Source: Saccostrea echinata
Lineage: Eukaryota
DNA length: 64,000 nucleotides
NCBI RefSeq assembly: GCF_033153115.1
Contig: NW_026889758.1
Span: 22,816,001 to 22,880,000, forward strand
Reading direction: 5' to 3'
This document shows, one piece after another, positions 3,897-42,781 of the stretch. Below the pieces are notes generated by a model. It was not told the DNA's origin and made no database searches. It saw only the letters and a list, made by a program, of their open reading frames with translations. Position 1 is the first letter of the stretch, and the number at the start of each line of letters is the position of its first letter. A program made the translations under genes and the position numbers.

Positions 3897-4403
3897 GTTT
3901 GGCGATATACTAATTTAGTATAACATTACAGTAGGAATATGTCATTCTTGAAACGTGTATAATATCAAAATTTTGTAATATTCTAGTGTATATCAAGCAG
4001 AAAGATTTACAAAAAACTAAAATTAACCAATGTGCGCTTTAAAAAAAAGTTACGAATACAGTTCGAATTTCCTCGACAATACATTATATAGAAAATATAC
4101 ATTATCCTTGACCCAAGCGCCTATGGTTTTGACTGAGTGCTAATTTTGATTTATTTTGCTACTGATTCTTGAGAAATAAAACATATAATCAGAATGTTCT
4201 TAATATCTAGATATATTCGAATAATGTCAACTTTTTAAACTTTATTTTATTTTTTATGTTTATAAATACCAATTCGTATGGAAGCATTATTTGGAATCCA
4301 TGCTATTTTGGCTAAGTGAGCATAAAAATACCATGAATGCTACGTACAAAATTAATTTAATTCGTAGTGTATTTTTCTCTTACCATTTCTCTGGAGCGCC
4401 AAA

Positions 4404-4663
4404 TAATATTATATGATTGAATAATTTCCCTCTTTCTGATTGGCTGAGATCCAACAATGTTAGAAAAATACTACGTTATATTGACCTACACGTGACCTTC
4501 CAGGTCAATATAAGGAATTATTGCAGGTCAATATAATGAATCACGTGACCTTCCAGGTCAATATAAGGAATTATTGCAGGTCAATATAATGAATTATTCC
4601 TGTTCCATTTTTTCATGTTACAATGTGTTCTTGTTGAAATTTCTCGTTAAAACTTTCAATTAA

Positions 4664-4703
<40 letters not shown>

Positions 4704-4895: not shown

Positions 4896-6848
4896 ACATA
4901 AATTATTGAGGGTACATAAAAACATCATCAATTTCATTATTGTGCACAATAATTGAATTGATGCGTGCATCAAACTAATTGTTGCTCTCATCAATGGAAT
5001 CGATGTGTGCATCAGTTCAGTTCAGTTCAGTTCTTTATTAACTCTGTTATCTTGCACAAATGCCTGGTAGGATACCTCCATTTTTTTGTGAGGAAACCTA
5101 GCTGTAAAAGTAGAAATACTTCAATGACAAATTCTTGAGAAAAATTATATCTTATTGAGGAACTTATTGTCTGACCTTAAGCTCAAGTTTTGCTCACAAA
5201 AATTAATTCAAACCTTGATATGAATGGTTTATTGATCTTTTTATTTCAATTGAAGATATCTTCAATTATTTTACAAAGATTTTGTAAAATCTTTGTGAGT
5301 TAATGTGCGCATCAGTTCTTTTAAAGAGAGCATTGACGGATCCAGAGGGGGGCTTTGAACCACCCTTTATTTTTCAAAATGGAGAGAGAGAGAGGGGGGA
5401 TAAAACAAGTTTTCTGGAAAATATATTTTTATGTTTAATAGCTTTGAATAAAAAACAAAACAAAAATGCAATCTTTCTCCATTCCACTACTCTCCTATTT
5501 ACTTTCATCCGTTTACTTTCTCTAATCCCCACTACACCCCGATGCTTACAATCTTTTTTAAAGATTGCATGGACCCTTCATATTCTGAGGATGTTTCAGA
5601 AAATATTTTAACCGATGAATCTGAATGAACTCCAAATGGTGACAGCATTAATAGATATGTTCTAGTCTTAAGCGAATGCAGATTAGAAAAATGTTGGATT
5701 ATGTTGATCGAACATTAAACTTTTTCTGGTGTAGTTTTTATTGCATTGGATGATGTACATCATATCAAAAATGGTTAGTCTAAGTTCTGTTTTAAAATAT
5801 TCTTGCTTTGGCAATAGCAGCGTTGTATATCTAAATAAGCCATTAAAGGGAGTATGCATAAGAGCATTTTTCTGTGTATGTGAGTCTATGAGTGGGGGGG
5901 GGGGCACCTGAAACCCCCTTCCCTTTGAAAAAATATGTTTACTCGGAGATATAACTAATTAAACAGATGTTTTATCTAAAAGAATTGTTGTGCGCATTAA
6001 TTGAATTGGTGTCTTTAACCTATTCCCAGTTTAAAAAAATCAATATTCAACCTATTTCCATTTGCAAATAACAATAAATTCATTTATAGTCCATTTGTTT
6101 TTATAGCAATTAGGTCAAGTACATGTCACATTAAAATTACCTGTATTTTGTACTCTTTGATACACCTTAAGACCAAAAAAAAAAATACATTAAATAGATT
6201 TAAGAAAAAATATTATTCAATTCACTTAATTTTGTACACTTTCAATATACACTTTAATACAGAAAATAAATTAATTAATTAAATAGATTTAAGAAAAATA
6301 TGAATTATTCGTATTAAATCAATTGTTGATATTATTATATGATTTTCTGAACTAATGCACGCATTAATTGAATCATTGCTTCATTTGAATTATTGCGTTC
6401 ATCAATTCAATCGTTTTTTCATCATTTCATTTGAAGAGAGAATTATTGTGCTTATCAGTTCAGCAAATGAATAAATGATATCAACTATTGCATTAATGCG
6501 CGCAATAATTCAGAAATGAAAATATCATTTATTATTTATTTATGAGATCTTGAATTGTTGAGCGCATCAAATGAATTGATGATATTGATAAATAATAAAA
6601 GACATTTTCCATTATGCTAATTTAGCGGTCCATATACAGTGTATTTCTTCCAAAGACCAAATAAAGCGCTCAATGGATTAAAATGTGTTAGGTCTTCAGC
6701 CCCATAGGAAACAATTTCATTTGAAGAGAGCAAAAAGGGGGGGGGTACAGAAATGCATTCACAATCAAAAAAAAAAAGGGGGGGGGGGCGGGAGACTCAG
6801 ACGTTATTATTGAAGAGGCACACTGTAAATTGACTTTTTTTTCTATTG

Positions 6849-23310: not shown

Positions 23311-26300
23311 CATGAAGCAAGCAACCGACTTTAGAAGAGTGTATAACTGACAATATTTCTCTTTATAACTAAAAAAAAATTATCTAAATCTGAAGGATGT
23401 ATAATATGAAAACAACCCTGAAAATGGCATACATGGAGACGAAAAAATCTAATCAAATAAGCTAGACTTGACTTTTTTTATATCAAAAAGTTATAACCTT
23501 ATCATATTGCGTCATTTCAGCAAAGCTATAAGTTTATTTCAGTACACAGATGGGAAAATATTTGTTTATTACATATTTGCGTTTTACATATTGGGCTAAA
23601 CTTTTGATGCCTCATGAATGTATTGTTTTTTTTCTATAAATGTTTTTTTCTGAAGATTTACTTATGCAATGTGTAAGAGCTACGGTATTCTGAATTCATG
23701 TGATCTGTCCTATGTATGGAGGAATCAAAGTTTAAATCAATTTTTTTTTTTACAAGATTGGTTTAGGAGTATATAAAATTCATCTAAATGTTTAAAATAC
23801 AGGATTTTTAAGAAGAGTTTTGGAAAAGAAATATACCTTAGTAAACTCCCAGAAGACGTGAGAATTATATTAACAAAATTTAGAACTTGTAACCACAGAC
23901 CTCTAATGACTGGCAAAAAATAAATCTTTGAAATGGTATATTCCTTAAACACGGTATGTTAATATTTACACCCACTGAATTTCTTAAGAAAACCATTGTC
24001 GTTTATCAATCAGTTTACACCGCTAAGCATATCCTTAAGCAGTGGCTGTTCCATCAATGAAAGGGCACAATGACGTACATATCAATAATAAAATGTTTAA
24101 TCTACTCAATCCTACTTTAGATGATTATTTTTACAGATATAAATATAAACAATAAAATGTCTTTCTTTGTTTGTTAGTATGGAAATAAACATTGCAGTTA
24201 TTGCAGGGAAAAAATTACATCAGCCGCTTATACGCATTTTTTCTGCAATAGCTGTAATATTAATTCCCGTACTAACAATCAAAGAAAGCATTCAATTTAA
24301 AGCTTATTGAGACTATACTTTGAGAAGCTGTGGTAATGCATCTTGACCAACCGTTTTAGGGCCTAGTCCCATACAGAGAACACGAATTTCATACTTTTTG
24401 TAGAGGGTTATCAGCTCATTATAATCAAACAGTTTACTTGAGTAAAGTGATGTTATTGTTTTGACCTTGAACCAAGCTATAGTAAGTCTAAGACTGGGCA
24501 TCGCAGGGGAGCACTTCATTTGTTGTGAGCCCTCCATGTCTTATCTCAAGTACCAGTTTTATCACACATTTTTGAGAAAAGTTTTGGACATAAAATATAA
24601 CAAGTCACCCTGTATATTGATTTACACATATCTCAATTTGTTTTAGTTTTTTGTTGACAATTTCTGGGATAAAACATTTTGATAAAAAAAAGAAAACAAA
24701 TGTCACGATTTCCAACCAGGCACAATAAAGCTGAAAAATTCCTACTTAAAAAACACATAATACTGGCTTTAGCAATGGTGCATATAATATTCAGGAAAAA
24801 TGATTAATATGTACTTTTGAAACGTACAAAAGGTATTTCTTGCCATCTAAAAATGCAGCCGATTTCTTTATAAAGTGTATTAAGACAACAGCATTAATGC
24901 ATCTTACATAATTAGTTTCCTGTGAACCGGAATGTGTAAATCCAATATGTAAAGCCAACAGTAAATCAGACAGAAATAAGAGTAAATTCATTAAAAGAAT
25001 ATTAAAACGTTAGTGTTATTTTCGAGTGTTTAGAATATTTATATTTGCATTAGTGTTTCAACCACTTACTTCTAATTATAGCTGATTATCGCACTGCGTA
25101 AAAACTTGTACGGCGCAAGTATATTTGGAATCTTTATGATGCACATCTTTCAGAAATGATTAGCGAAAATGAAATGATTAAAGACTTATGAGATAGAATA
25201 TTTATATAAAAAGAAACCTAATTTTCTACCACACATATCAAATTCATCAATTGAAAGCACGTTCATTCATTTTTCTCGACATTAAAAGGCAAGAAATCTT
25301 CAGCTGTTTTGAATGGGAAGAGGCTCCGGGACCTTTGACCTTGTAATTGAATTTTAAAAAATGTTGACAAACTAGAATGCTGCAGTTGAAAAAGTGCTTA
25401 AGACTTTCTTCAAGCATTAATTGTCTCCTTATCACTTCAAAAAAAAAAAAACCTCTTAAATAGAATTATGGTCAGTGGTCATAACGACTTGTTACTGTGT
25501 TTAAATCTTTATGAAAGGTGATGCTATTTTTCGGGCATAATTAAGTAGTTTCTTGACCATTTTAAAAGATTCCCATGCGACAAATACATGAACAAAAGGT
25601 AGAATAGGCCTGGGGTCTATACTGGGGGTTTGGGAAAGGGAGTTCCTGTCATTAGTGACGAATTCTGGATATTCTTTTATTTTTAAACGGAGCCTTAAAT
25701 TAGGCTCAAAGATTCGGGGGCGTATAATTTTTGGACTGTCCGTCCGTCTTTTTTTCCCAGAAGCAGGCACGTAGCATCGTTTTTCAAAGTTTGGGTGGGG
25801 CAACTAGAAAATAATTGACAAGTAAAAATAATAATAAAAGGGGGTGTCTGAATACCAGAATGATTGGTGTGAACCTTTGCATTGAACTTTAGCCCGACAA
25901 AATTGGTAATTTATCCATCGTTATGACAAGTATCAGCTCCATAGTCTATAACGATAATAGACGTCAAAATATTCATTTAGAAAATATCGTTATATAACTT
26001 TTCTTATCTTTCAAAATAATTTCTAACAACAAAGTTGATTCTTTATGAATTTCTTTATTATTTGAATAATATTAATCTGTAGGCACCCCATTCTCTTAGC
26101 TAAAATCAAACGCATCCGAATTTTTTTTTCTTGTTTTTATACATGTTCTCTCGTCGATTTCACTTCCATCCTCATCGTCGCAAACCACGGCCAAAATGTA
26201 CGATCCTCTCCCATTCTACAGTTCTAGGAGAGAGCGGACTCCGGACCGTGGCTTGAGACGATGTTCCATCCTTTGAGGTATAATATGTGTATAATATGTA

Positions 26301-26523
26301 TGCTGTTTTGGATCTCGTAACCAGCCTCTATAACCAGACAGAGCGCATGCGTGAAATAAATTTCCATCGAGATCGGAAAACAGCAGAGAGGAAATTCGGA
26401 ATATGTATTGGAAACTAGTAATGCGGAATGATACTATAGTCAGATGCAGAAATTTTTGCATGATTCGATCAACTTTTATTTAAGAAAGCAGAAGAATAAA
26501 TGAATCAACTTTACAGTTAGTTT

Positions 26524-26554
<31 letters not shown>

Positions 26555-27004
26555 TCATTCTTATAATTAATTAACTAAGTAACTGATTAATTTATTAAAA
26601 AATATATATTTGTATTTTTTTTAAAAAATTCATTTATAACATTCTTTCCTTCATTTATTAATTATTCCATCCATTAATTAATTATCTATTAATTAATTCA
26701 TTGATTTATTAATTTGTATGCATGTTTGTTTACTTATTTATTATTCTAATAATTAATTGATTAATTCATTAAGAAGTTCATTTATTTGTTTGTTTATTTA
26801 TTTATTATATTCATTCCTTCATTTATCTCGTATTCTATTAATTAATTAATTTATTTATTTATCTATTTATTTATGCATTCATTTATTCGTATTTTTCTTT
26901 ATTTCTTTATTTTTTATTTCTTTATTGATTGATTGATTTTTGCATTTATTTATTGATTTATTTATGCATTTATCATATATTTCTTTTATAAATTAATTAT
27001 TTTT

Positions 27005-29748
27005 ACAGGGTTTGTATACTTATTACCAGGGTCTGTTTATGTATTGCCATAGTTTGTATACCATCACCAGGGTCTATATACTTATCACCAGGGTCTGTAT
27101 ACCTATCACCAGGGTCTGTATACTTATCACCAGGGTCTATGTACCTATCACCAGGGTCTATATACCCATCACCAGGGTCTGTATACCTAGGGGTGCAACG
27201 ATACACTAACTTCACGATACGATACGTATCACGGTATTCAGTTCACGATACGATACGTATCACGATACATGACAAGGTTAAAAAGTCTTTCAAGTTTGTC
27301 ACCTTTTTTTTTAAACTTGACAGGGTTATACAAAATGTTCATATTTTTTGATAATAATTAAAATAACATTTTGTTAACTTGAATTGGATTGTTAGGTAGA
27401 TCTTTGAGTTGTGACAACATTCAAAACCAATAATGAACATTTACAGGAACTACGGGGACCTTTCCTAATAATCTTCCTTTTAAATTGGAATGAAAAAGGA
27501 TGACATTCATTCTTTTATTCCTTTTATTTACGTAGAAACCAGTTGTCATATTTCTCGTGTTAATACGTTTTAGTCAACAAGACAGCGAATTTTCATCGAA
27601 ATACACACCCTGATGAAATATCGTGTATTAATACGTTTAGATCTAAAGGGTTTATCATTTAACACCTATAACTTATAGTCACATTAAGTCCTTCTCCGTG
27701 TTAAATCTGAGGTCTGTAAGATGCTGGAGATGAGTTTAACTGCCGTAAATGCGTTATCGGCGACATTACCATCACCAGGGTATGTATACCTATCACCCGG
27801 GTCTGTATTATCTATCACCAGGGTCTGTATACCCATCACCAGGGTCTGTATATCCATCACCAGGTACTGTATTATCTATCACCAGGAACTGTATATCTAT
27901 CACCAGGGTCTATATACCTATTACCAGGGTCTGTATACCTATCACAAGGGTGTGTATGCCCATCACCAGAGTCAATATACCCATCACCAGGGTCTGTATT
28001 ATCTATCACCAGGGTCTGTATACCCATCACCAGGGTCTGTATACCTATCACCAGGGTCTGTATACCCATCACCAGGGTCTGTATACCTATCACCAGGGTC
28101 TGTATTATCTATCACCAGGGTCTGTATACCTATCACCAGGGTCTGTATACTTATCACCAGGGTCTATGTACCTATCACCAGATTCTATATACCCATCACC
28201 AGGGTCTGTATACCCAACACCAGGGTCTGTATACCCATCACCAGGGTCTATAAACCTATCACCAGGGTCTATATACCAATCACCAGGGTTTGTATACCCA
28301 TCACCAGGGTCTGTATACCTATCACTAGGGTCTGTATACCTATCACCCGAGTCTCTTTACTTATCACCAGGGTCTGTATACCTATCACCAGATTCTGTAT
28401 ACCTATCACCAGCGTCTACATACCCATCACCAGTGTCTGTATTATCTATCACCAGGGTCTGTATACCCATCACCAGGGTCTGTATACCTATCACCAGAGT
28501 CTATATACCAATCACCAGGGTCTATAACCCTATCACCAGGGTCTATATACCCATCACCAGGGTTTGTATACCTTTCACCAGGGTCTGTATACCTATCACC
28601 CGGGTCTCTTTACTTATCACCAAGGTCTGTATACCTATCACCAGATTCTGTATACCTATCACCAGGGTCTCTTGACCCATCATTCGGGTCAGTTTATCTA
28701 TCACCAGGTTCTGTATACCAATCACCAGGGTCTCTTGACCCATTACCAGGGTCAGTTTATCTATCACCAGGTACTGTATACCAATCACCAGGGTCTCTTG
28801 ACCCATCATTCGGGTCAGTTTATCTATCACCAGGTTCTGTATACCAATCACCAGGGTCTCTTGACCCCTTACCAGGTTCAGTTTATCTATCACCAGGTAC
28901 TGTATACCAATCACCAGGGTCTCTTGACCCATCATTCGGGTCAGTTTATCTATCACCAGGTTCTGTATACCAATCACCAGGGTCTCTTGACCCATTACCA
29001 GGGTCAGTTTATCTATCACCAGGTACTGTATACCAATCACCAGGGTCTCTTGACCCATCACTCGGGTCAGTTTATCTATCACCAGGTTCTGTATACCAAT
29101 CACCAGGGTCTCTTGACCCATTACCAGGGTCAGTTTATCTATCACCAGGTACTGTATACCAATCACCAGGGTCTCTTGACCCATCACTCGGGTCAGTTTA
29201 TCTATCACCAGGTTCTGTATACCAATCACCAGGGTCTCTTGACCCATTACCAGGGTCAGTTTATCTATCACCAGGTACTGTATACCAATCACCAGGGTCT
29301 CTTGACCCATCATTCGGGTCAGTTTATCTATCACCAGGTTCTGTATACCAATCACCAGGGTCTCTTGACCCATTACCAGGGTCAGTTTATCTATCACCAG
29401 GTACTGTATACCAATCACCAGGGTCTCTTGACCCATCATTCGGGTCAGTTTATCTATCACCAGGTTCTGTATACCAATCACCAGGGTCTCTTGACCTATT
29501 ACCAGGGTCAGTTTATCTATCACCAGGTACTGTATACCAATCACCAGGGTCTCTTGACCCATCACTCGGGTCAGTTTATCTATCACCAGGTTCTGTATAC
29601 CAATCACCAGGGTCTCTTGACCCATTACCAGGGTCAGTTTATCTATCACCAGGTACTGTATACCAATCACCAGGGTCTCTTGACCCATCACTCGGGTCAG
29701 TTTATCTATCACCAGGTTCTGTATACCAATCACCAGGGTCTATATACC
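27005..29748 (+). repeat. 21-bp minisatellite array, left arm, with a 126-bp higher-order repeat at ~28655-29735
   Basis: Unit ATCACCAGGGTCTGTATACC(C/T) with 22-bp variants (…GTATTATCT). The distal part alternates two 63-bp trimers. Confidence 0.95.
27188..27767 (+). mobile_element. Truncated hAT-like element inserted in the left minisatellite arm
   Basis: Begins TAGGGGTGCAACGATAC with subterminal CGATAC repeats. No right TIR seen. Absent from the right arm. Confidence 0.65.
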
Positions 29749-30196
29749 CTTCATCACGGTTTTGTCTTCCCTCGTGCAGGGTCTAGTTCCCATCTTTTTA
29801 GTAGGGTGACCTTCAACATAGTTTGCATTCTGAAAATGAATCCAATTACTTTTTAGGGTGTCTTCATAAACGTAACATCTTGTGGAGAACGTATGAGTTG
29901 TTTAATGAACTATAATGATTGTATTGTGATTAAGATGCCTTGACTCTAATGTTATATTGATCTTATTTACTTTTTATTTTGTAGTGTAAGCCTGTCAAGG
30001 TGGAAGCAAAGGATATAGAAACTTAACAATGGACAAAGATTTATATTTGTGTGGAACTATCTTTACATTGTAAATGCCAATGTATCCTGATTCCTCTATT
30101 GCATAAATCGAGAGAAATCTAAAAATTCCATTATGTTGTTTACTTGTTCCAGAGAAAATGTGAAGATATACATATCTACATAATTAATCAATAAAG

Positions 30197-32615
30197 TATC
30201 ACCGAGCAGAATTAACCCTTTTTACCAATTTTCTTTTGAACTTTTATTTTGCACTTAAATATGTTTTATCACTTATTTTCATTGAAATTAGTTCTGAATC
30301 TTTATTCATTGTTGGACCATGAAACACCGAATTATTTACTTAATTGCATAGTGACACTCTTTGGACAATTGCTGAGAACTACAAAGGGACAGAATGTTAA
30401 TACAACCACTCATTTCTAATACCTTATAAAAACATTCATGTAATTATTTTATTTATCTTTCTTTCATGTCTATCTTATCAAAACTCCTCACAGATTGTAA
30501 TTTGCTCAGCATATGTCATTTTGTCACTCAATTTGCTAATTGTTGTCAAAGAACTCTTTTATATACCAGTATCTGAATTGTATGTGGCAGTTCGGAGGCC
30601 TGACGCAATACTGGCCACTTCCGTCTGTGTTCCCCGCATGTATTTCTTGAATGTTAAAATTGTTGTCCATCATTAAATTAAATGCTTTTATTAATAAACT
30701 CGGAAACTAAATTACCCGTTACTTTGGATTTATAATATGTGATTTCGGGAAGAGCCCTAGGAATACGGCACTACTTCTTCCGGCCCACAGCGCCACTCGT
30801 TTTACGCCAACATTCCCTCTTACCCGATCAACGACATATAATATTTTTGACCCAAACTACGTGGTCATAAATGGTGGATGAATCCTAAGGGTAAAACAAC
30901 GCCCGGGGCTACTGCATATATTTTGCAGTAGTTTGATCCCGTACCTAAACCAAGCGAGTTTCTCCCACATTACGTGGACTTCTCTGCATGATGATGGACA
31001 ACTACCAATTTCGACCATCTTGGACGTCATGGACCTTTCCCACAACGATTAATGGACAAGTTCTACATCGTTTCACCAAGTGTTTTAGATGTCACAGACC
31101 TGGACACTTCGCCAAGAACTGCAATTTTCGCAGCGCACTAAAATCAAAGTCGAACCAGGTACGTGATCAGCGCAGAATTCAAGAATATTTTGGACAAAAA
31201 GAACTTCTAAAGGAACTTCCGTTTAACAACATTAGAAATTCGGCTTTACGTAATTTTATGGACTTTTCATCTGTTCTTAAACACGAGCTTGCCAAAACAA
31301 AACAAACTGTGAAAGACTCCCGGGACAAACTGTTAGAAATAATTTCAAAACTTCGTAAAACAGAAAATGAATTGAAGTCGACCAAAAATCAAAATTCCGT
31401 GCTTCAAGAGACTTCGCAACAGAAAATCTCGGAACTTCAATCCAAACTGAAAACAAGCACACAAGAAATTAGTTTGCAACGGCAAGTCGGAGACCTGAAG
31501 AGACAACTCGACGCATCCCAACAAGTTATCAAAATGGCTTCGGAGCGGATTCACGACCTAACTCATAAAAATCTTCACCAAGTGGAAATAATTCAAGATC
31601 AGAAAGAGGAAATAACTCATTTAAATTCTCGCAATTCTGCTTTGGAAGATGCCAGGTCTAAGCATTGTCAGGTTATAGATGACCTACGCGAGGATAATCA
31701 TCGGCATATTCGAAAAATAAAACATCAAAAGGAGGAAATTGAAGACTTACATCAAGAAACTTATGATTTAGAACATGCCATAAAACAACATCGTGAAGTT
31801 ATCGATGATTTACGTAATGAACTCTATCCAAATTGCAGAAGACACCACAGATGCAAACAGAACAAAGACCGACGCTACTACCGGTGACCGACCGAGTCCA
31901 TTCCAAACACGAGGACGTGTTTTCCCCGGAGCGGTGGGAAACTATCACCGAGCAGAATTAACCCTTTTTACCAATTTTCTTTTGAACTTTTATTTTGCAC
32001 TTAAATATGTTTTATCACTTATTTTCATTGAAATTAGTTCTGAATCTTTATTCATTGTTGGACCATGAAACACCGAATTATTTACTTAATTGCATAGTGA
32101 CACTCTTTGGACAATTGCTGAGAACTACAAAGGGACAGAATGTTAATACAACCACTCATTTCTAATACCTTATAAAAACATTCATGTAATTATTTTATTT
32201 ATCTTTCTTTCATGTCTATCTTATCAAAACTCCTCACAGATTGTAATTTGCTCAGCATATGTCATTTTGTCACTCAATTTGCTAATTGTTGTCAAAGAAC
32301 TCTTTTATATACCAGTATCTGAATTGTATGTGGCAGTTCGGAGGCCTGACGCAATACTGGCCACTTCCGTCTGTGTTCCCCGCATGTATTTCTTGAATGT
32401 TAAAATTGTTGTCCATCATTAAATTAAATGCTTTTATTAATAAACTCGGAAACTAAATTACCCGTTACTTTGGATTTATAATATGTGATTTCGGGAAGAG
32501 CCCTAGGAATACGGCACTACTTCTTCCGGCCCACAGCGCCACTCGTTTTACGCCAACATTCCCTCTTACCCGATCAACGACATATAATATTTTTGACCCA
32601 AACTACGTGGTCATA
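30197..32615 (+). mobile_element. Young non-autonomous LTR retroelement (2419 bp) with TA…TA LTRs
   Basis: 673-bp direct repeats at 30197-30869 and 31943-32615, identical by eye, with termini TATCACC…GGTCATA. 4-bp TSD AAAG (30193-30196 / 32616-32619). PBS-like TGGTGGATG 2 nt after the 5' LTR. Purine-rich GGAGCGGTGGGAAAC before the 3' LTR. Confidence 0.9.
30988..31887 (+). CDS. LTR-element ORF: CCHC zinc knuckle followed by a long coiled coil (Gag-like/accessory protein)
   Basis: Intact intronless 299-aa ORF that fills most of the 1073-bp internal region. CFRCHRPGHFAKNC = Cx2Cx4Hx4C. Heptad-rich K/E/Q/L region from ~aa 95 to 280. Basic C-terminus. Confidence 0.8.
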   Translation: MMMDNYQFRPSWTSWTFPTTINGQVLHRFTKCFRCHRPGHFAKNCNFRSALKSKSNQVRDQRRIQEYFGQKELLKELPFNNIRNSALRNFMDFSSVLKHELAKTKQTVKDSRDKLLEIISKLRKTENELKSTKNQNSVLQETSQQKISELQSKLKTSTQEISLQRQVGDLKRQLDASQQVIKMASERIHDLTHKNLHQVEIIQDQKEEITHLNSRNSALEDARSKHCQVIDDLREDNHRHIRKIKHQKEEIEDLHQETYDLEHAIKQHREVIDDLRNELYPNCRRHHRCKQNKDRRYYR

Positions 32616-34445
32616 AAAGTGTGAAATGGTAAAAATTATCATAAAAGAAGAGCAACCAACACAAAGTTCAAATTTCTTCTATGTTCATGACAAGAGAACA
32701 GTAGGATAATAGTGCCAAAATTTGTGTTCTACAAAGCCTAGCTGTCATGTTGTCAAGAAGGAGACCCAGTGTATTTTCACTGCACGGAAATGATATGGAA
32801 TGTCTTTAATCGTTTTTTTGTTTTTTGTTTTTTTTTTCTTTTTGGTTGGGATGCAATCGTCTATGGCATATTGTGACTGTCGTGGCGGCTCATCATATTT
32901 AAAATTATTATATATTTTTAAAGTGGGATGTTCTGTTTAAAAGCTTAGGACCAAGGATCGAGTTATGATTTGAAAGTAGATCAAACTTCAATGTCAAGTT
33001 TATGAGGTTAAAAATCAAAGTATATTTGGAAGGTCTTGTTACAGCTATGTTCATGTACAAGAAAATATTAAAGTCCTGTCTCATCAGGTGCAAAGCTTTG
33101 GCCAGGATTAAAAGTTTTGTAAAAAGAAAGTCAAATGCCAAGGTCAAAGATCTTAGGCTATATACATTCCAGTGACTTGTTATAATTTTGTCACGGGTAT
33201 TGCACAGGTCAATTATGAAAACATATATCGCATTCCATACTAAGCTTGGGTCAGGGTTATTTTTTTTTATAAGTATATCAAATTTCACTGACAAGGCCAT
33301 AAGATAAAAAAAATAAATTCAGAAAGATTTTGTAATTCGTAATTCATATGTGGAATATGAGAGTCCGATCTTCTCAAAATTATTATATATTTTTTATTAG
33401 ATGAATATTTCTTGAAATTGATAAACTAAACAAAAAATTATGACCAATGTTCAAATTTTTGTGATGAACAAACACATACACTGTCCCGGCGTATTTGCTT
33501 TAGCAATGGAGAATAATTGAATAAAATTAATTCCATGAAAGATAAAATGATAATTATGATAAAATGTTTTATTTGAAGTAGTGATATGTATATCTTTCCG
33601 AATTAATTTTATTAGCAATACATATATTCAAAGAGTAAGGCGAAGATAGTGTATTAACCCCCCCCCCCCCCCCCTCCATTTATTTTTGTAAACTTTAACA
33701 TATCATGCTGGCAATTTTTTTATGCTTGCTAAAATAAAAACTGATATATGAATAATTTACGGTCTAAAATTATTTCATATAAACACACTGCCCACACGTT
33801 AGGTGCCTGCAAACATCTATGTGCAACAGAGGCAATTTATGTTACTTTTTTGTTTATACATGTATGAGGTAAAAAGTTTTTTTTTTTGTTATAAATACCT
33901 CCTGCATTTACAAGTGAGGTTTGAAATATTAAAATTTTATTTTAAGAAAATGTTCCGAATATTCGACTATCGTTCGAATAATGTTATCGAATAGTCGACT
34001 AAGGAAAATAAATATTTTGACATCCCTAAAAATACACAGTAACAAGATTTCGAATATGAACTTTTCGCATAATTAAATATGAATCACAGGGATTTTTTAA
34101 ATATAATTATGAAGTATACACAATTTCAAAAATAAATCACAAGGTAATCGAATATGAATTACAAAATGGAGTGTGTTTGTTTCTTATCTGAATATATCTT
34201 TGCGATTTCAAATAATTCTCCCATGTATCGTACATTTTTGGGCAATTTCATAGAAAGTCAGTTTTTCTAATCATGTGCAGGCAAACACAATCTGTGATTA
34301 ATGTGTTAACTGTTGATTCTACTTGTTTTATAAACAAAATATTTCATAGAATTTTCCTACTAGATGTACAATTTGCAACCAGTTTAAGTGTTCTCAATTC
34401 TTTAATTTATTGGATAAGATAGATTAATCGAACGCTTTATTCGCA

Positions 34446-34999
34446 TTTTTATGCCCCCGTATCGAAGATTCGGGGGTATGTAGTTTTGCCCTGTCCGTCC
34501 GTCTGTCTGTTTGTCCGCAAAAACTTTAACCTTGCCCATAACTTTTGATTGGTTGGAGCTATGACTTTCATATTTTACATGTGTATTTCTTGTGACAAGA
34601 CCTTTCTCTGGGTACCACCATATTTGACCTTGACCTTGGAGTTTGACCCAGTTTTGCAAAATTTTATCAAACTTTAACCTTGGTCATAACTTTTGAAAGG
34701 TCGGTGCTTTGGCTTTCATATTTCACAGGTATATTTCTTGGGAGAAGGCCTTTCCTTGGGCACCATTAATTTTGACCATTTGACCTTGACCTTGATTTTT
34801 GACATACTTTTGAAAAAAAAATTAACCTTGTCCATATCTATTCAATCGTTGCTACCGGGGCTTTCATATTTCACAGGTTTATTCCTCGGGACAAGACCTT
34901 ACTTTGGGTACCAACATATTTGATTTGCGTTTGAGAAAGTTTAACCTTTGCTATAAGTTGCCATACGGGGGCATCAGTGTTTCACAAACAAATCTTGTT
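34446..34999 (+). mobile_element. HINE, same family as 18452-19607
   Basis: Same 5' (TTTTTATGCCCCCG…CGGGGG) and 3' (GGGGGCATCAGTGTTTCACAAAC…CTTGTT) ends with fewer internal units. Confidence 0.8.
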
Positions 35000-35800
35000 T
35001 TCCGTAACGGTGATTTTTGTACATCAGTATTGGGGGAATTCAAATTCATACTTTAACATAAACTCAGTAGGAAGGAAAATATTTATACAACAAATCAAAT
35101 AATTTGCAATCATAAAATGTTAACTTGTTTTATAAAAGATAAAAAATTGTAATAACAAATTGTTAATCTGAAATTATAATTTGATGAATTGTAAATACAA
35201 ATGAAATAAATAAAATCTGTAGTATTTAGGTGCCTTGAAAATCTATAGTGAGGTCTTTATTATTGGTCGACCTTTCCCTACACCTTGATCTACATGTTTA
35301 GGCCTTGAAATAAATTCCAAGCAACACATTCCAGACAATTATTTAGCCATCCTTCTTTATTTATCATGATAGTTAGACTGACAACACTTTGTTATAAATA
35401 GTGACTTTAACCCACTTCCCCCAATAAAAAATTATGTAATCGATAGGTTATACCTCCTTAAATTTAAATTGAAATTTAAACTTAAATTTTCAGTGCAGGC
35501 GTTCATTAAAAAATATTTTTACAAAGTCGCAAAGTCCAAATGTAGACTTCAAAGCTAAGTATGCATGAAAGTTTGATATGTTTGATGTCAAAGAACATAT
35601 CGTATTAATTTCTCGAACGGTCTATAACATGGTCATTTCAGGCCAAAAATAAATAAACAAATTAGTGAACAAATAAACGTACAAATAAACCTCACTTTAC
35701 AGCAAAGGACTTTCTCTTCTTTAGTGAACAAAATTATCTAAAAACTATAATGGTTATTATCGAATATTTCAATTTAATTTTGTTTGGTATTTCAAATTAA

Positions 35801-36595
35801 AACAAAATGTGTTTGTGAAACACTAATGTCCCTGTATGGCAGCTTTTGACAATGGTTAAAGTTTCTCAAATGCAACTCAAACTCAAATATTAATTAATAG
35901 CTGAAAAATGTTGTTACCCAAAGAAAGGACTCTCAGTGAATATATCTGAGAAATAAGAAATTCCAGGCACTAACCATTCAAAAGGTTTAGCTCAGGTTAA
36001 AGTTTTTTAAATGTGGGTCAAACTGCAAGGTCAAGGTCAAAGGGTCAAATTAAAGGTACCCAGGGTAAGGCTTTGTCATAAGAAATACACATGTAAAACA
36101 TTAAAGAATTAGCACCAACTGTTCAAAATATATGGCCAAGATTAAAGTTTTTCAAAAGTATGTCTTATTCCAAGATAAAGGTCAAAATTTCAAGTATGTC
36201 GGAACCCAAAGAAAGGATTTGTCACAAGGAATACATATGTGGAAAATAATAGCCCTGATACTAATTTCTCAAGGTTAAAATTTTTAAAAGTTGGTAAAAC
36301 TCAAAGGTCAAGATCAATTTTTTTAATATCCGTTCAAAGGTCTTGCTACTATGAATACACATAATAGTATAAAGTATGAAAGCCCTTGCACCAACTGTTG
36401 AAAAGTTATAGCCAAGGTTAAAGTTTGGTAAATTCTTGAAAAAGTGGAAAAAACTCAAAGATCAAGGTCAAAAAAGTCAAATATGTTAGAATCCAAACAA
36501 AGGCCTTATCACAAGGAATGCACATGTGAAATATGAAAGCCATAGGTCCAACCAATCAAAAGTAATGGGCACGTTTTAATGGGACAGACAAACAG
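35801..36595 (-). mobile_element. Degenerate HINE abutting the right minisatellite arm
   Basis: AACAAAATGTGTTTGTGAAACAC start, CAAGGTCAAGGTCA units, ends at GACAGACAAACAG. Confidence 0.7.
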
Positions 36596-36596
36596 G

Positions 36597-39350
36597 TGAT
36601 GGGTATACAGACCCTGGTGATAGATGTACAGCTCTAGTGATAGATAATAGAGACCCTAGTGATAGATAATATAGACCCTGGTGATAAGTATACAGACCCT
36701 TTTAATAGATAATACCTTCCTTGGTAATAGAAATACAGACGCTGGTAATAGATATACGGACCCTGGTAATAGGTCTACAGTCTCTGGTGATAGGTATACA
36801 CACCCTGGTGATGGGTACATACAGACCCTAATGACAGATAATACACACCCTTGACATAGATTTACAGATTTAGACCCTGTTCATAGATACCCAAACCATG
36901 GTGATGAGTATACAGACCCCTTGATGGGTATACAGACCCTGGAGATAGGTATACAGACTCTGGTCATTGGTATGCAGACCCTGGTGATAGGTATATAGAC
37001 CCTGGTGATAGATAATACAGACCCTGGTGATAGGTATACAGACCCTGGTGATGGGTATACAGACCCTGGTGATAGTTATACAGACCCTGGTGCTAGGTAT
37101 ACAGACCCTGGTGATGGGTATACAGACCATGGTGATAGATAATACAGACCCTGGTGATAGTTATACAGACCCTGGTGATAAGTATACAGACCCTGGTGAT
37201 GGGTAAACAGACCCTGGATATAGGTATACAGACTCTGGTCATTGGTATGCAGACCCTGGTGATAGGTATATAGACCCTGGTGATAGATAATACAGACCCT
37301 GGTGATAGGTATACAGACCCTGGTGATGGGTATACAGACCCTGGTGATAGGTATACAGACCCTGGTGATGGGTATACAGACCCTGGTGGTAGATAATACA
37401 GACCCTGGTGATAGTTATACAGACCCTGGTGATAAGTATACAGACCCTGGTGATGGGTATACAGACCCTGGATATAGGTATACAGACTCTGGTCATTGGT
37501 ATGCAGACCCTGGTGATAGGTATATAGACCCTGGTGATAGATAATACAGACCCTGGTGATAGGTATACAGACCCTGGTGATGGGTATACAGACCCTGGTG
37601 ATAGGTATAAAGACCCTGGTGATAGGTATAAGGACACTGGTGATAGGTATATAGACCCTGGTGATAGATAATACAGACCCTGGTGATGGGTATATAGACT
37701 CTGGTGATGGGCATACACACCCTTGTGATAGGTATACAGACCTTGGTGATAGGTATATAGACCCTGGTGATAGATAATACAGACCCTTGGGATAGGTATA
37801 TAGACCCTGGTGATGGGTATACAGACCCTGGTGATAGATAATACAGACCCTGGTGATAGGTATACAGACCCTGGTGATAGATAATACAGACCCTGGTGAT
37901 AGGTATACAGACCCTGGTGATGGGAATACAGCCCCTGTTGATGGGTATACAGACCCTGGTGATGGGTATATAGACCCTGGTGATAGGTATATAGACCCTG
38001 GTGATAGATAAAACGGACCCGGGTGATAGGTATACAGACCCTGGTGATGGGTTTATAGACCCTGGTGATGGGTATACAGACCCTGGTGATGGGTATACGG
38101 ACCCTGGTGATAGGTATACAGAATCTGGTGATAGGAATACAGACCCTGGTGATAAGTAAAGAGACCCGGGTGATAGGTATACAGACCTTGGTGATAGGTA
38201 TACAAACCCTGGTGATGGGTATATAGACCCTGGTGATAGGTTTATAGACCCTGGTGATGGGTATACAGACCCTGGTGATGGGTATACAGACCTTGGTGAT
38301 GGGTATATAGACCCTGGTGATAGGTACATAGACCCTGGTGATAGATAATACAGACCCTGGTGATGGGTATATAGACTCTTGTGATGGGCATACACACCCT
38401 TGTGATAGGTATACAGACCCTGGTGATAGGTATATAGACCCTGGTGATAGATAATACAGACCCTGGTGATAGGTATACAGACCCTGGTGATGGGTAAACA
38501 AACCCTGGTGATAGGTATACAGACCCTGGTGATGGGTATACAGACCCTGGTGATAGATAATACAGACCCTGGTGATGGGTATATAAACTCTGGCGATGGG
38601 CATACACACCCTTGTGATAGGTATACAGACCCTGGTGATAGGTATATAGACCCTGGTGATAGATATACAGTTCCTGGTGATAGATAATACAGTCCCTGGT
38701 GATGGATATACAGATCCTGGTGATGGGTAAACAGACCCTGGTGATAGATAATACAGACCCTGGTGATAGGTATACAGACCCTGGTGATGGGAATACAGCC
38801 CCTGTTGATGGGTATACAGACCCTGGTGATGGGTATATAGACCCTGGTGATAGGTATATAGACCCTGGTGATAGATAAAACGGACCCGGGTGATAGGTAT
38901 ACAGATCCTGGTGATGGGTTTATAGACCCTGGTGATGGGTATACAGACCCTGGTGATGGGTATACGGACCCTGGTGATAGGTATACAGAATCTGGTGATA
39001 GGTATACAGACCCTGGTGATAAGTAAAGAGACCCGGGTGATAGGTATACAGACCTTGGTGATAGGTATACAAACCCTGGTGATGGGTATATAGACCCTGG
39101 TGATAGGTTTATAGACCCTGGTGATGGGTATACAGACCCTGGTGATGGGTATACAGACCCTGGTGATGGGTATATAGACCCTGGTGATAGGTACAAAGAC
39201 CCTGGTGATAAGTATACAGACCCTGGTGATAGGTATACAGACCCTGGTGATAGGTATACAGACCCTGGTGATAGGTTTATAGACCCTGGTGATGGTATAC
39301 AAACTATGGCAATACATAAACAGATCCTGGTAATAAGTATACAAACCCTG
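36597..39350 (-). repeat. 21-bp minisatellite array, right arm, inverted relative to the left
   Basis: Unit GGTGAT(A/G)GGTATACAGACCCT. Contains a block duplication with ~867-bp spacing (marker GAGACCCGGG at 38161 and 39028). Units degenerate toward 36600-36900. Confidence 0.95.
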
Positions 39351-40346
39351 TAAAAATAATTAATTTATAAAAGAAATATATGATAAATGCATAAATAAAT
39401 CAATAAATAAATGCAANNNNNNNNNNNNNNNNNNNNNNNNNNNNNNNNNNNNNNNNNNNNNNNNNNNNNNNNNNNNNNNNNNNNNNNNNNNNNNNNNNNN
39501 NNNNNNNNNNNNNNNNNNNNNNNNNNNNNNNNNNNNNNNNNNNNNNAAGGAATGAATATAATAAATAAATAAACAAACAAATAAATGAACTTCTTAATGA
39601 ATTAATCAATTACTTAATTATTAGAATAATAAATAAATAAACAAACATGCATACAAATTAATAAATCAATGAATTAATTAATAGATAATTAATTAATGGA
39701 TGGAATAATTAATAAATGAAGGAAAGAATGTTATAAATGAATTTAAAAAAAAAAATACAAATATATATATTTTTTTAATAAATTAATCAGTTACTTAGTT
39801 AATNNNNNNNNNNNNNNNNNNNNNNNNNNNNNNNNNNNNNNNNNNNNNNNNNNNNNNNNNNNNNNNNNNNNNNNNNNNNNNNNNNNNNNNNNNNNNNNNN
39901 NNNNNNNNNNNNNNNNNNNNNNNNNNNNNNNNNNNNNNNNNNNNNNNNNNNNNNNNNNNNNNNATTTAATTTTCTGCTTTTTTAAATAAAAGTTGATCGA
40001 ATTATGCAAAAATTTCTGCATCTGACTATAGTATCATTCCGCATTACTAGTTTCTATTATATATTCCGAATTTCCTCTCTGCTGTTTTCCGATCTCGATG
40101 GAAATTTATTTCACGCATGCGCTCTGCCTGGTTATAGAGGCATATTATGTGCTCAGTTACTAATACAATCGAGATCGGTATTCCTATTTAACGATCAAAT
40201 ATGTCTGCGCCCTGTTAGTACTCATGACAAGGTGAAAAGTTAAGAGTTGCTGCTTGCATAATATGCAAGATGTACAACGTAATTTGTGACAATTTCCCTA
40301 TGGAAACTCCAGTGATTGACAAAAATGAAAGAATAGGTTTGTAACT

Positions 40347-42781
40347 ATGCCTTTGTCCGATTACGTCGCATCCTTGGGGGATAACCCTTATTTCGGTGCC
40401 GGGTTTGGGTTATTTGGAGTAGGGTTTGCAGCAACTTTGCTCAGAAAAGGAGCCCAGTTTGGATTTGTTTGGTTTCGAAGAAACTGTATGATTACACTGG
40501 AAATTCCTAACAGAGATAAAAGTTACCACTGGTTACTCAACTGGATCACGACTCACGGCACCCGTACACATCATGTCAGTGTAGAGACAACATTCAAACA
40601 AACAGAAACTGGTCGCATTTACACAAAATTTGATCTCATTCCAAGCCCAGGCATCCATCTTTTCTGGTATAAAAACAACTGGATCCGTGTAGAGAGGACT
40701 GTAGAAAAGGGTGCAGTGTCGTTACAGACTGGTAAACCATACGAAAGTGTTCTTTTAACGGCTCTGGGGATCAATAAAACATTATTTTTGGACATATTGG
40801 AGGATGCCAGGACACTAGCCCTAGTGAGTGAAGAGGGCAAGACAGTGATGTATACACCCATGGGGGCAGACTGGGTTCCCTTTGGATATCCAAGGAGGAA
40901 AAGACCAATAGACTCGGTTATTCTGGATCAAGGAGTGTCTGAGAAACTTTTAACAGACATTAAAGAATTCATTGAAAATCCCAAGTGGTATTTTGATCGT
41001 GGTATTCCATACAGAAGAGGTTATCTCTTATATGGTCCCCCTGGGTGTGGGAAAAGTAGCTACATTACAGCACTGGCAGGTATTCTAAGTAGATGAAAGC
41101 CCTCGCTTCAAATTTTTATAAGATTTTGTTTTTATTTATTTAAAGCCATAATTTTGAAATACATTTTTAAAGAATTTGAAACTCTATTTTCCTAATTATA
41201 AAATCCTTTTTGTTAACCATCCTCCTGACAGATCTAAAAACAGCATGGTAATATTTGAGAAAAAATGTACAGACATGCATTCTCCTGGTTTTACAATGAA
41301 AAAAAAAAAACCAAATGGGTTAATGCATAAAATTAGGGTAACTGTAAACAAACATATTATTTCATGGGCCTAATGAGGTACACATTATGCATAAATCAGA
41401 ATTTTTAAAAGTGCAAAATAACAGCTATATAACAGAATGACTTGAATATATTTTAAAATGCATATGTACATATTCAACATGTTTTATTGTTATACCTTTA
41501 AAAGTTGGTTCCTATATAAATCTATACTTTAAAAAGTCTAACATTTCCAAGTTTTAGTGCAAGTAAAGGGAAGCCAGCACAAGATACAAGTATATGAAAA
41601 AAAAATTAAAGGTATACTGTTGACTGTGTTTTCAGGCAGAATGTCTTTTGTCGACCCCTCGAACCAAACTGTTTGCCTTGGGCCTAACAGCATCAGGCAA
41701 ACAGTTTGGTTCTTGGGTCTGACAAATTGCATGTTGCCCAAAAACAGAGTCAATAAATATATATTATTATAAAATACATGTATCAATCTGAACAGGACAG
41801 TTGGATTACAGTATATGCCTTATGAATCTGAATGACAGAGGAATGTCTGATGATCGTCTAAACCACTTACTCACCACTGCCCCAGAACAAAGTATCATAT
41901 TACTAGAGGATATTGATGCTGCATTCCTCAACAGGGACTTGGCAAAAGAAAGTATGTCAGTGTTGCAAATGTCAGAGGAAAAAAATTAAGTCTCAAATGG
42001 GACTCAGAATTAATCCCTAGTATAAACGCTAGATAGCACACTAATTTCAATATGTAAAAGAGTAGTGTTAATGTATAAAGATATGCTCACATTTCTAAAA
42101 GATTCTGATGGAGACTTGTGGATAAGATAATTTCAGTGATTTGAAATTTAATCATAACATCTGTCTTGGGTATGTTCAGAGATATAAATAATGTTATTTT
42201 TGTCTCAGGTATATTACATATATGTATGTGCACACAAATGTTAAAGTTGAAAATTTTTTATAAGATGGCATTCTTTAAATTTTCAGATCCTACCATGTAC
42301 CAGGGAATGGGCCGTTTGACTCTCAGTGGACTTTTGAATGCTCTAGATGGTGTGGCTTCAGCTGAGGCTCGCATAATATTTATGACAACAAACTACATTG
42401 AAAGGTAATAAATACAGGTTATGAAATGATTCTTTCCTCCAAAAATTACAAACATACATGTATCTTTATGTTTCCATGTTATGTTAGCAAAAAGTCTGAC
42501 ACTTTAAGAGTTTTTTTGTTTGAAGACTTGATGCTGCTCTCATCCGACCAGGACGTGTAGACTTGAAGGAAATGATTGATTATGCTACAGATTATCAATT
42601 AGAAAAAATGTACACAAGATTTTACCCTGAGGAGGGGGAAGAGGGAGGAAAGAAATTCAGTTCTCTTGTGAGACAACATAACAAGCCAGTGTCTGCTGCT
42701 CAGGTACAAGGACTCTTTCTGCAATACAAGGACAACCCGAAAGGAGCCCTGTCCAATATAGAACTCCTCTGGTCATCATGA
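40347..42781 (+). CDS. BCS1L: Mitochondrial chaperone BCS1 (AAA ATPase, complex III assembly), 420 aa
   Basis: Exons 40347-41079, 41796-41951, 42287-42404, 42526-42781 (1263 nt, GT/AG). N-terminal [79 protein letters not shown] at ~42825. Confidence 0.97.

What the first reader, a model, noticed from the sequence alone, without database searches (positions are those of the whole stretch)
26324..40141. 13.8-kb foldback-like element with three-part inverted arms built on a 21-bp dyad minisatellite
Seen: each arm has a ~200-bp unique terminus, a ~480-bp strand-asymmetric (TTTA)-rich block and ~2.7 kb of 21-bp repeats pointing inward. The interior of ~6.8 kb holds only other mobile elements, with no transposase. 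The arms differ by point substitutions and by independent array expansions, which argues against an assembly mirror. Known: Drosophila FB/Galileo and sea-urchin TU elements have modular TIRs with tandem repeats. Inference: this is a giant non-autonomous foldback transposon family that I cannot assign to any superfamily, since no TSD is recognisable (…GTAACCA|GCCTC and GAGGC|ATATT).
Basis: partly seen in the sequence, partly recalled or inferred. Interest (0 to 1): 0.8.

Follow-up and report, generated by a model that had tools for sequence, protein, structure and literature searches.

The report
Foldback-type DNA transposon family in oyster
This is one worn copy of a real, recently mobile family of about 35 large "foldback" jumping genes that carry no transposase of their own; they duplicate 7 bases where they land and leave tip remnants where they leave, which points to the P-element/Galileo group, a known kind of element.

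Summary
The inverted arms are real and are not an assembly mirror. The genome holds 71 copies of the element tip (control 0). At least 28 form convergent pairs 7.7-13.4 kb apart with the same build: tip, A+T-rich block, inward-pointing 21-bp array, central core.

- **Ends.** The window's right arm has lost its outer 38 bp.
- **Target duplication.** The family does make one, of 7 bp: 6 of 11 pairs exact, 3-4 more once terminal GA variation is allowed, plus 5 excision footprints.
- **Interior.** It is not just other mobile elements. It is a family-specific non-coding core of 4.7-5.0 kb, 96-99.6% alike between close copies. In the window it is interrupted by a 2.4-kb LTR-like insert.

The 21-bp unit is not a dyad.

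The superfamily call is inferred, not shown. The 7-bp duplication, footprints keeping 10-23 nt of the tips, and the Galileo-like arms point to the P superfamily (about 0.55). No matching transposase was found.

Earlier notes of this scan describe other foldback families in this genome (Mutator type, 9-bp duplication). This is a different family. The N runs could not be tested with reads.

The parts
26275..26323 (+). True outer tip of the left arm: the canonical 38-bp tip GAGGTATAATATGT...GTAACCA with an 11-bp tandem duplication (GTATAATATGT).
   Evidence: The flank upstream of 26324 is conserved in nearly all other termini and similarity ends at GAGG. The 32-bp tip occurs 71 times in the genome, control 0.
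26324..26519 (+). It forms an intra-arm inverted repeat: GCTGTTTTGGATCTCG at 26302-26317 pairs with CGAGATCGGAAAACAGC at 26368-26384.
   Evidence: The 40 scored hits are 96-100% identical (100% is the window's own copy). Sequence read. The two repeat copies are the junction of the 115-bp mini-derivative at C54:15574411.
26520..27005 (+). A+T-rich, strand-asymmetric (TTTA)n-type block of the left arm.
   Evidence: GC 0.13, AT skew -0.32. TRF rows. The same block is present in other copies.
27006..27189 (+). Outer part of the left 21-bp array (8.8 units; consensus CAGGGTCTGTATACCTATCAC).
   Evidence: TRF.
27190..27766 (+). Nested full-length copy of an unrelated 577-bp dispersed repeat that splits the left array.
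   Evidence: The 39 other scored matches are 92-99% identical and near full-length; 431 first-look candidates.
27767..29741 (+). Inner part of the left 21-bp array, amplified as a 63-bp (3-unit) higher-order repeat, 31 copies.
   Evidence: TRF. Array-to-array inverted matches of 79-95%.
29742..30197 (.). Family core, first piece. Its last 5 bases (AAAGT, 30193-30197) are the target duplication of the nested element.
   Evidence: 98% identical to other copies' cores. Junction read.
30198..32615 (+). Nested 2,418-bp LTR-like element with a 299-aa zinc-knuckle and coiled-coil ORF (30988-31887), flanked by a 5-bp duplication AAAGT. It is not part of the family.
   Evidence: Absent from all other copies. 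Weak zf-CCHC match below Pfam's cut-off. Ends read.
32616..36594 (.). Family core, remainder. Non-coding. It carries a TTAATTAA scar at 35890-35897 where sister copies hold a 339-bp TTAA-flanked MITE.
   Evidence: 96-98% identical to other cores. No ORF over 85 aa and no Pfam domain at threshold. Scar shown.
36595..39350 (-). Right 21-bp array, 130 units, pointing inward.
   Evidence: TRF. Inverted matches to the left array.
39351..39963 (-). A+T-rich block of the right arm, holding both N runs (39417-39546, 39804-39963).
   Evidence: Read. The N-run flanks are collinear with the left arm. Not tested by reads.
39964..40141 (-). Subterminal unique segment of the right arm, ending at canonical position 39. 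The outer 38-bp tip and the target duplication are missing beyond 40141.
   Evidence: The flank after 40141 is single-copy.

Best explanation
The window holds an old, disabled copy of a young family of non-autonomous cut-and-paste DNA transposons of foldback build. There are about 35 copies of 7.7-13.4 kb when intact.

BUILD. Each element has two long inverted arms around a non-coding core of 4.7-5.0 kb. An arm consists of a 38-bp tip, about 190 bp of unique subterminal sequence, about 500 bp of A+T-rich (TTTA)n sequence, and 0.5-2.8 kb of a 21-bp minisatellite.

HOW IT WORKS.
- Shown: a transposase supplied in trans pairs the two tips, cuts the element out and inserts it at a 7-bp staggered target cut.
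- Shown: excision leaves 10-23 nt of the tips at the donor site between the two copies of the 7-bp duplication.
- Inferred: such remnants are what an unusually long staggered cut of the P-element type (17 nt) would leave. The enzyme is therefore most likely a P-superfamily (THAP9/Galileo-like) transposase.
- Inferred by analogy with Galileo: the 21-bp units serve as reiterated secondary binding sites.
- Shown in part: arrays grow and shrink independently on each arm, while the unique arm parts are kept alike by arm-to-arm copying.

THE WINDOW COPY can no longer move. It has lost its right tip and has taken up two nested insertions.

CONFIDENCE. About 0.95 that this is a non-autonomous cut-and-paste foldback family with a 7-bp duplication; about 0.55 for the whole statement including the P-superfamily assignment.
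For: FAMILY AND PAIRING
- The 32-bp tip occurs 38 times forward and 33 times reverse, control 0. There are 28 convergent pairs 7.7-13.4 kb apart, plus copies with one damaged tip.
- Nine copies read in full share the same order of parts.

TARGET DUPLICATION
- Of 11 pairs, 6 have an exact 7-bp duplication and no longer match. Three to four more fit once extra or missing GA/GAG at the tip is allowed.

EXCISION FOOTPRINTS (L and R = nucleotides kept from the left and right tip)
- C9:29422897, TSD TCTGTTG, L10-12/R14-16.
- C9:32094985, TSD TTGACTG, L12/R12.
- C27:2118080, TSD CTGTAAG, L17/R0.
- C9:40054205, TSD GCTTATT, L23/R19.
- A 115-bp mini-element at C54:15574411.
- Internal-deletion derivatives break 19-24 nt from the tip.

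LINK TO P/GALILEO
- P transposase makes a 17-nt staggered cut, described as unusual among cut-and-paste elements (PMC7776569).
- Galileo has a 7-bp, sometimes 8-bp, duplication and TIRs up to 4.2-4.7 kb with tandem repeats and A+T-rich segments (PMC4168063). Galileo's THAP domain binds sites inside the TIR repeats (PMC3688188).
- P-type transposase genes exist in this genome: 33 PF21787 matches, several with intact 800-900-aa frames.

NON-AUTONOMY AND ARMS
- No ORF over 85 aa in the core, no Pfam domain at threshold, no tblastn trace of a P-like transposase.
- The core is evenly 91-97% alike between subfamilies, with no exon-like pattern.
- The 21-bp double unit occurs 182 times, control 0. 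All 100 listed places lie in family copies, forward on left arms and reverse on right arms.
- Arms within an element are 99.3-99.8% alike in three copies, against 97.1% between elements. Seventeen substitutions are shared by both arms of single copies.
Against: - No transposase gene lies in any copy, and none of the 33 P-like loci lies between a pair of tips.
- The one intact P-like element I read (904 aa) has neither the GAGGTATAAT tip nor the 21-bp motif. The P assignment therefore rests on indirect marks.
- The tip starts GAGG, unlike the CAT... tips of the P element and zebrafish Pdre2.
- Two remnants keep 19-23 nt, more than 17. That needs a few bases of repair synthesis or a different stagger.
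- The 7-bp duplications show no palindromic consensus like Galileo's GTANTAC, although the sample is only about 15.
- That the 21-bp unit binds a protein is untested.
Confidence: 0.55

Rival explanations
1. It is a Foldback/Mutator-type (MULE) non-autonomous element, like Drosophila FB and the other foldback families noted in this genome, and is moved by a Mutator-like transposase.
For: The foldback build with satellite arms is classic for FB. Earlier notes of this scan report MULE-type foldback families in this genome, one with 21-bp arrays (I did not check them). The GAG start of the tip recalls Mutator tips (from memory only).
Against: The duplication is 7 bp, not the 9 bp reported for those families and for FB. 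This family's 21-bp unit was found only inside this family among the 100 listed places. Retained tip remnants of 10-23 nt are not a described Mutator mark (from my own knowledge).
Confidence: 0.12
2. It belongs to another or an undescribed cut-and-paste superfamily that also makes 7-bp duplications (Dada-like, an atypical hAT, or new), or its transposase has been lost from this genome.
For: No autonomous partner was found. The tip sequence resembles no P-type tip that I could compare. Searches for the 186-bp subterminal segment and the 16-32-bp tip found only family copies and their remnants.
Against: In the published classifications I know, 7 bp is otherwise given only for Dada, which targets small-RNA genes, whereas these targets are varied. 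The tip-retaining footprints fit the P mechanism. Copies up to 99.6% alike suggest a transposase that acted recently.
Confidence: 0.28
3. It is an assembly mirror artefact, or two independent insertions of a smaller one-armed element facing each other.
For: The window copy has two N runs in one arm, its right tip is missing, and its arms share no derived substitution.
Against: About 33 two-armed copies on many contigs, without N, have the same core between the arms and a 7-bp duplication flanking the whole unit. One-armed tips are rare and mostly belong to truncated copies.
Confidence: 0.02

Closest known systems
Galileo (P superfamily, Drosophila)
   Same: 7-bp target duplication. Very long, internally repetitive TIRs with tandem repeats and A+T-rich segments. 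Most copies non-autonomous. TIR length variable through repeat expansion. Several subfamilies in one genome (PMC4168063; PMC3688188).
   Different: The host is a bivalve. The repeat unit is 21 bp in arrays up to 2.8 kb, against about 140-bp repeats in Galileo. There is a conserved 4.7-5.0-kb non-coding core instead of transposase remnants. The tip sequence is unrelated. No palindromic target consensus was seen. No transposase is linked to the family.
Drosophila P element and its internally deleted derivatives
   Same: Cut-and-paste movement. Donor-site remnants and deletion break points cluster around 17-24 nt from the tips, as expected from a 17-nt staggered cut. Many internally deleted derivatives (PMC7776569).
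   Different: The P element has 31-bp TIRs, an 8-bp duplication, a length of 2.9 kb and its own transposase.
Drosophila Foldback (FB) and MULE-type foldback elements, including those noted elsewhere in this genome
   Same: Modular inverted arms built of tandem repeats around a variable centre. Sizes of 8-25 kb.
   Different: Those make 9-bp duplications and belong to the Mutator superfamily (for this genome, unverified; FB from my own knowledge). This family makes 7 bp.
Tetris (Drosophila virilis foldback transposon)
   Same: A foldback-type DNA transposon whose arm repeats behave like a nascent satellite (PMC4079207, listed).
   Different: I did not read the details. The host and the repeats differ.

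Membership tests
Class II cut-and-paste TIR transposon | Terminal inverted repeats shared by many copies at unrelated loci | tested here: met
   71 tips, control 0; 28 intact convergent pairs.
Class II cut-and-paste TIR transposon | Target-site duplication of fixed length flanking the whole element | tested here: met
   7 bp: 6 of 11 pairs exact, 3-4 more allowing for GA variation at the tip, plus 5 footprints or mini-elements.
Class II cut-and-paste TIR transposon | Evidence of excision | tested here: met
   Empty donor sites that keep both copies of the 7-bp duplication and 10-23 nt of the tips.
Class II cut-and-paste TIR transposon | Own transposase (autonomy) | tested here: not met
   No ORF over 85 aa or Pfam domain in the core; no copy holds a P-like domain. 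The family is non-autonomous.
Foldback-like structural class | Long inverted arms made largely of tandem repeats | tested here: met
   Arms of 1.3-3.6 kb with 21-bp arrays.
P superfamily (P, 1360, Galileo) | 7-8-bp target duplication | tested here: met
   7 bp, with one case of 8; Galileo is 7 bp, rarely 8.
P superfamily (P, 1360, Galileo) | Mobilised by a THAP plus RNase-H-like transposase with a GTP-binding insertion domain that shares the element's ends | tested here: inconclusive
   P-like genes exist in the genome, but none lies inside a copy. The single family read has different ends.
P superfamily (P, 1360, Galileo) | Long (17-nt) staggered donor cleavage | tested here: inconclusive
   Indirect only: footprints of L10-12/R14-16, L12/R12 and L17/R0, and deletion break points at 19-24 nt. 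One remnant of L23/R19 exceeds 17.
Mutator / Foldback (MULE) | 8-11-bp (typically 9-bp) target duplication | tested here: not met
   7 bp throughout.
Dada | 6-7-bp duplication with insertion into small-RNA genes | tested here: not met
   Target sequences are varied and non-repetitive. No tRNA or Rfam family lies at the window site. The definition of Dada is from my own knowledge.

The most novel reading that the evidence does not exclude
The family is moved by a transposase that is not of the P type: either an undescribed cut-and-paste superfamily with a 7-bp duplication and a long staggered cut, or a host-resident gene. In that case the strictly conserved 5-kb non-coding core would be kept because it is needed in cis or has a function of its own, not as a passenger.
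Probability: 0.15. Interest if true: 0.65.

Novelty: new member of a known kind. Interest (0 to 1): 0.35.

Why it matters
If the P/Galileo assignment holds, this would be a Galileo-style foldback element in a mollusc. I found no report of one in the papers I searched. It would also come with natural footprints that record how the enzyme cuts.

It shows that 10-kb elements with no gene of their own can still spread recently, with copies up to 99.6% alike. Its arms also offer a clean case of a minisatellite growing inside a transposon.

For genome annotation, about 35 loci of 8-14 kb can now be labelled correctly, with true ends and a 7-bp duplication. The window copy sits about 70-85 bp upstream of where transcript-like contigs of a BCS1-like gene begin, so it may affect that promoter.

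None of this changes what is known about how transposons work.

Tried and rejected
- **P-like partner.** I looked for the family tip or the 21-bp motif in the best intact P-like transposase element (C51:6931447, 904 aa, and its relative on C3). There is none, and no TIR within 8 kb.
- **Transposase remnant in the core.** tblastn of that transposase against nine copies found nothing better than E = 3.6.
- **Core ORFs.** Against Pfam, only sub-threshold noise.
- **RNA genes.** Rfam and tRNA scans of 24-42 kb found nothing.
- **Reads.** The four public runs are small contig sets that cover only the BCS1-like gene from about 40213 onward. They say nothing about the element or the N runs.
- **Empty paralogous site for the window copy.** The left flank ends in an abundant 90-bp repeat and the right flank is single-copy, so no empty site was found.
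- **Wider survey of copies and P-like loci.** Later fetches were kept small.
- **'Deletion' in the window core.** I first read the missing 339 bp as a deletion. It is a TTAA-flanked MITE present in most subfamily-A copies, absent from subfamily B, and represented in the window by TTAATTAA.
- **'Nine shared derived states'.** My first count of states shared by the window's two arms was made up of gap columns and non-homologous tip columns. Counting substitutions only, it is 0 shared and 11 private.
- **Look-up of earlier findings by sequence.** Blank, which means nothing here.
Full report
WHAT IS IN THE WINDOW

- Composition flips sign between 26.5-30 kb and 36.5-40 kb.
- More than a thousand inverted matches link 27.8-29.7 kb with 36.6-39.3 kb.
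- Tandem Repeats Finder reports a 21-bp unit (CAGGGTCTGTATACCTATCAC) at 27006-27189 and 27767-29741 on one strand, and at 36595-39350 on the other.
- Reading both ends shows collinear unique segments and A+T-rich blocks.

THE FAMILY

The window is G000:C9:22816001-22880000 of a 923-Mb eukaryotic assembly. Earlier notes of this scan call it the rock oyster Saccostrea echinata; I did not verify that.

- The 186-bp subterminal segment gives 40 scored hits, 96-100% identical (the window's own copy is the 100% one). Most fall in +/- pairs about 8-13.6 kb apart.
- The 32-bp tip occurs 38 times forward and 33 times reverse, against 0 for the reversed control.
- From those coordinates I count 28 convergent pairs with both tips intact, 7,729-13,405 bp long, and at least five more two-armed copies with one damaged tip. 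The window's copy is one of these.

It also rules out an assembly mirror, because the other copies read contain no N.

TRUE ENDS AND TARGET DUPLICATION

Similarity stops at GAGG; the exception, L017, keeps only the inner part of the tip.
- The window's left end is therefore 26275. It carries an 11-bp tandem duplication of GTATAATATGT.
- The window's right arm simply lacks those 38 bases.

With the true ends, 6 of 11 pairs have an exact 7-bp duplication that is not extendable to 8. Three more fit when one or two extra GA dinucleotides at a tip are allowed. One fits when a missing GAG is allowed, and one has a single mismatch.

EXCISION FOOTPRINTS

A 16-mer search for the tip found extra sites outside full copies. 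Read out, they are remnants flanked by the 7-bp duplication. L and R give the nucleotides kept from the left and right tip.

| Site | Duplication | Kept |
|---|---|---|
| C9:29422897 | TCTGTTG | L10-12 / R14-16 |
| C9:32094985 | TTGACTG | L12 / R12 |
| C27:2118080 | CTGTAAG | L17 / R0 |
| C9:40054205 (same locus also on C24) | GCTTATT | L23 / R19 |
| C54:15574411 (115-bp mini-element) | (A)TGCTATG | L24 / R91 |

Three deletion derivatives break 19, 22 and 24 nt from the tip. A few other 16-mer hits are ambiguous or chance; one is an exon-intron junction. The control for the 16-mer with one mismatch is high (115 against 192 observed), so I count only the sites that have a duplication.

THE INTERIOR

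Between the arrays every copy has the same sequence.
- It is 4.7-5.0 kb long and 96-99.6% identical within the main subfamily.
- It is 88-91% identical by BLAST to a second subfamily, whose tips read GCTTTTTTGG and whose core is 3.9 kb.
- A genome search with the core returns it whole only in family copies. Two stretches of it form an inverted pair of a very abundant repeat, with 12,904 first-look candidates.
- It has no ORF above 85 aa, no Pfam domain at threshold and no trace of a P-like transposase.
- Conservation between subfamilies is flat, at 91-97% per 200 columns.

The family is therefore non-autonomous and its centre is non-coding, but the centre is the family's own.

In the window the core is interrupted at 30198-32615 by a 2,418-bp LTR-like element with a 5-bp duplication AAAGT. 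That element is the subject of another note, s1-817802.

At 35890-35897 the window reads TTAATTAA. Four sister copies carry a 339-bp MITE with 15-bp TIRs between two TTAA at that spot, and subfamily B has a single TTAA. The MITE seems to have been excised from the window copy.

The left array is split by a full-length copy of an unrelated 577-bp dispersed repeat.

THE ARMS

- Arrays differ widely between the two arms of one element, for example 37 against 131 units in C25. They also differ in higher-order period in the window: 63 against 127 bp.
- The consensus double unit occurs 182 times in the genome, control 0. All 100 listed places are inside family copies, forward on left arms and reverse on right arms.
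- The unit is not a dyad. Its longest inverted arm is 3 nt, as in shuffled units, and three units fold no better than shuffles.
- The non-array parts of the two arms of one element are 99.3-99.8% alike in three copies, against a mean of 97.1% between elements.
- Seventeen substitutions are shared by both arms of single copies. That requires copying from arm to arm at some stage.
- The window's arms share no derived substitution and differ at 11 positions of about 560 comparable ones. Together with its lost tip and nested inserts, this marks it as an old copy.

SUPERFAMILY

Shown: cut-and-paste movement, a 7-bp duplication, and tip-retaining donor sites.

Inferred: P superfamily.
- Among published superfamilies, 7 bp is characteristic of Galileo and 1360 in the P group; the P element itself makes 8 bp. 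Galileo shares the long, repeat-filled, A+T-rich arms.
- Galileo's THAP domain binds sites inside those repeats.
- The P transposase cuts 17 nt inside the element. The review calls this unusual among cut-and-paste enzymes.
- From my own knowledge of P-element repair studies, such a cut leaves part of each tip at the donor site. Remnants of up to 17 nt per side after end joining, and deletion break points just beyond 17 nt after interrupted repair synthesis, are what I see here, apart from one L23/R19 remnant.

Against:
- None of the 33 P-like RNase-H matches lies within a copy.
- The intact P-like element I read has other ends.
- The GAGG tip is unlike the P or Pdre2 tips.

I put the P assignment at about 0.55, another or unknown superfamily at about 0.28, Mutator/FB at about 0.12, and artefact at 0.02 or less.

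N RUNS AND READS

Both N runs lie in the (TTTA)n-type block of the right arm. The 25 bases on either side of each run match the left arm in order and orientation, with 0-3 mismatches. The left arm has 68 and 120 letters where the right arm has 160 and 130 N.

I did not fill the N runs. I shifted the start and the second call ran. The four runs found are small contig sets that cover only 40213-41000, which is the neighbouring gene. Continuity across the N runs therefore remains untested by reads.

CONTEXT

- The right break of the element (40141) lies about 70-85 bp upstream of where those transcript-like contigs begin.
- It lies 206 bp upstream of the ATG at 40347 of a BCS1-like gene (PF08740, E = 1.5e-41).
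- The left tip lies 11 bp after an abundant 90-bp repeat at 26173-26263.

VERDICT

This is a real and well-defined new family of a known kind. The superfamily call is reasoned but not proven. Earlier notes of this scan describe other foldback families in this genome of the Mutator type; this one differs from them in its duplication length, and its 21-bp unit turned up only in its own copies among the places listed.

Noticed in passing
window 35890-35897; L033 core about 5720-6060: Sister copies carry a 339-bp MITE with 15-bp TIRs (GGACATACGCAACGT) between two TTAA. Subfamily B has a single TTAA, and the window copy has TTAATTAA. This looks like an excision that kept both target copies, unlike the seamless excision of piggyBac.
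   Followed up: partly
L015, L028, L029, L045, L059, L026 (family tips): The outermost bases of the tip vary between copies: extra GA, GAGA or GAG before GAGG, or GAG missing, while the 7-bp duplication stays intact. This suggests slippage or untemplated addition at the cut ends.
   Followed up: partly
G000:C25:19209391 (+) and C25:19258348 (-): Two tips sharing the same private variant (…GGATCTCA) face each other 49 kb apart. This could be a copy with very large inserts, a macro-element, or a rearrangement between two copies. Not read.
   Followed up: no
window 40213-41078: A BCS1-like gene (BCS1_N domain) starts right beside the broken right end of the element. Transcript-like contigs begin at 40213-40228, about 70-85 bp from the element.
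   Followed up: partly
window 27190-27766: A full-length copy of a 577-bp dispersed repeat (431 first-look candidates; the other 39 scored matches 92-99% identical and near full-length) without obvious TIRs. Its class was not determined.
   Followed up: partly
window 26173-26263: An abundant repeat of about 90 bp (688 first-look candidates) ends 11 bp before the left tip of the foldback element.
   Followed up: no
window 30198-32615: A nested LTR-like element with a 5-bp duplication AAAGT, direct repeats near both ends (for example 30505-30560 and 32250-32306) and a 299-aa ORF with one weak CCHC knuckle and a coiled coil. It is the subject of note s1-817802.
   Followed up: partly
L043 / L044 (G000:C51:6927500-6935500, C3:4571000-4579000): A P-like transposase family with an intact 904-aa frame in one copy. 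The two copies are 96.5% alike over 3.9 kb, similarity runs on past the fetched 8 kb on one side, and no TIR lies within reach. Its ends are unknown.
   Followed up: partly
L049 (G000:C73:1336180-1336611): A 54-bp satellite whose unit contains a 16-mer identical to the family tip (ATACATATTATACCTC). Whether this is chance or derivation was not examined.
   Followed up: no
L033 core positions about 2281-2777 and 4021-4701 (of L033:2020-6720): The family core contains an inverted pair, about 70% alike, of a very abundant genomic repeat. The window's 148-bp tandem repeat at 34519-34923 may belong to it, but I did not map it onto those core positions.
   Followed up: no
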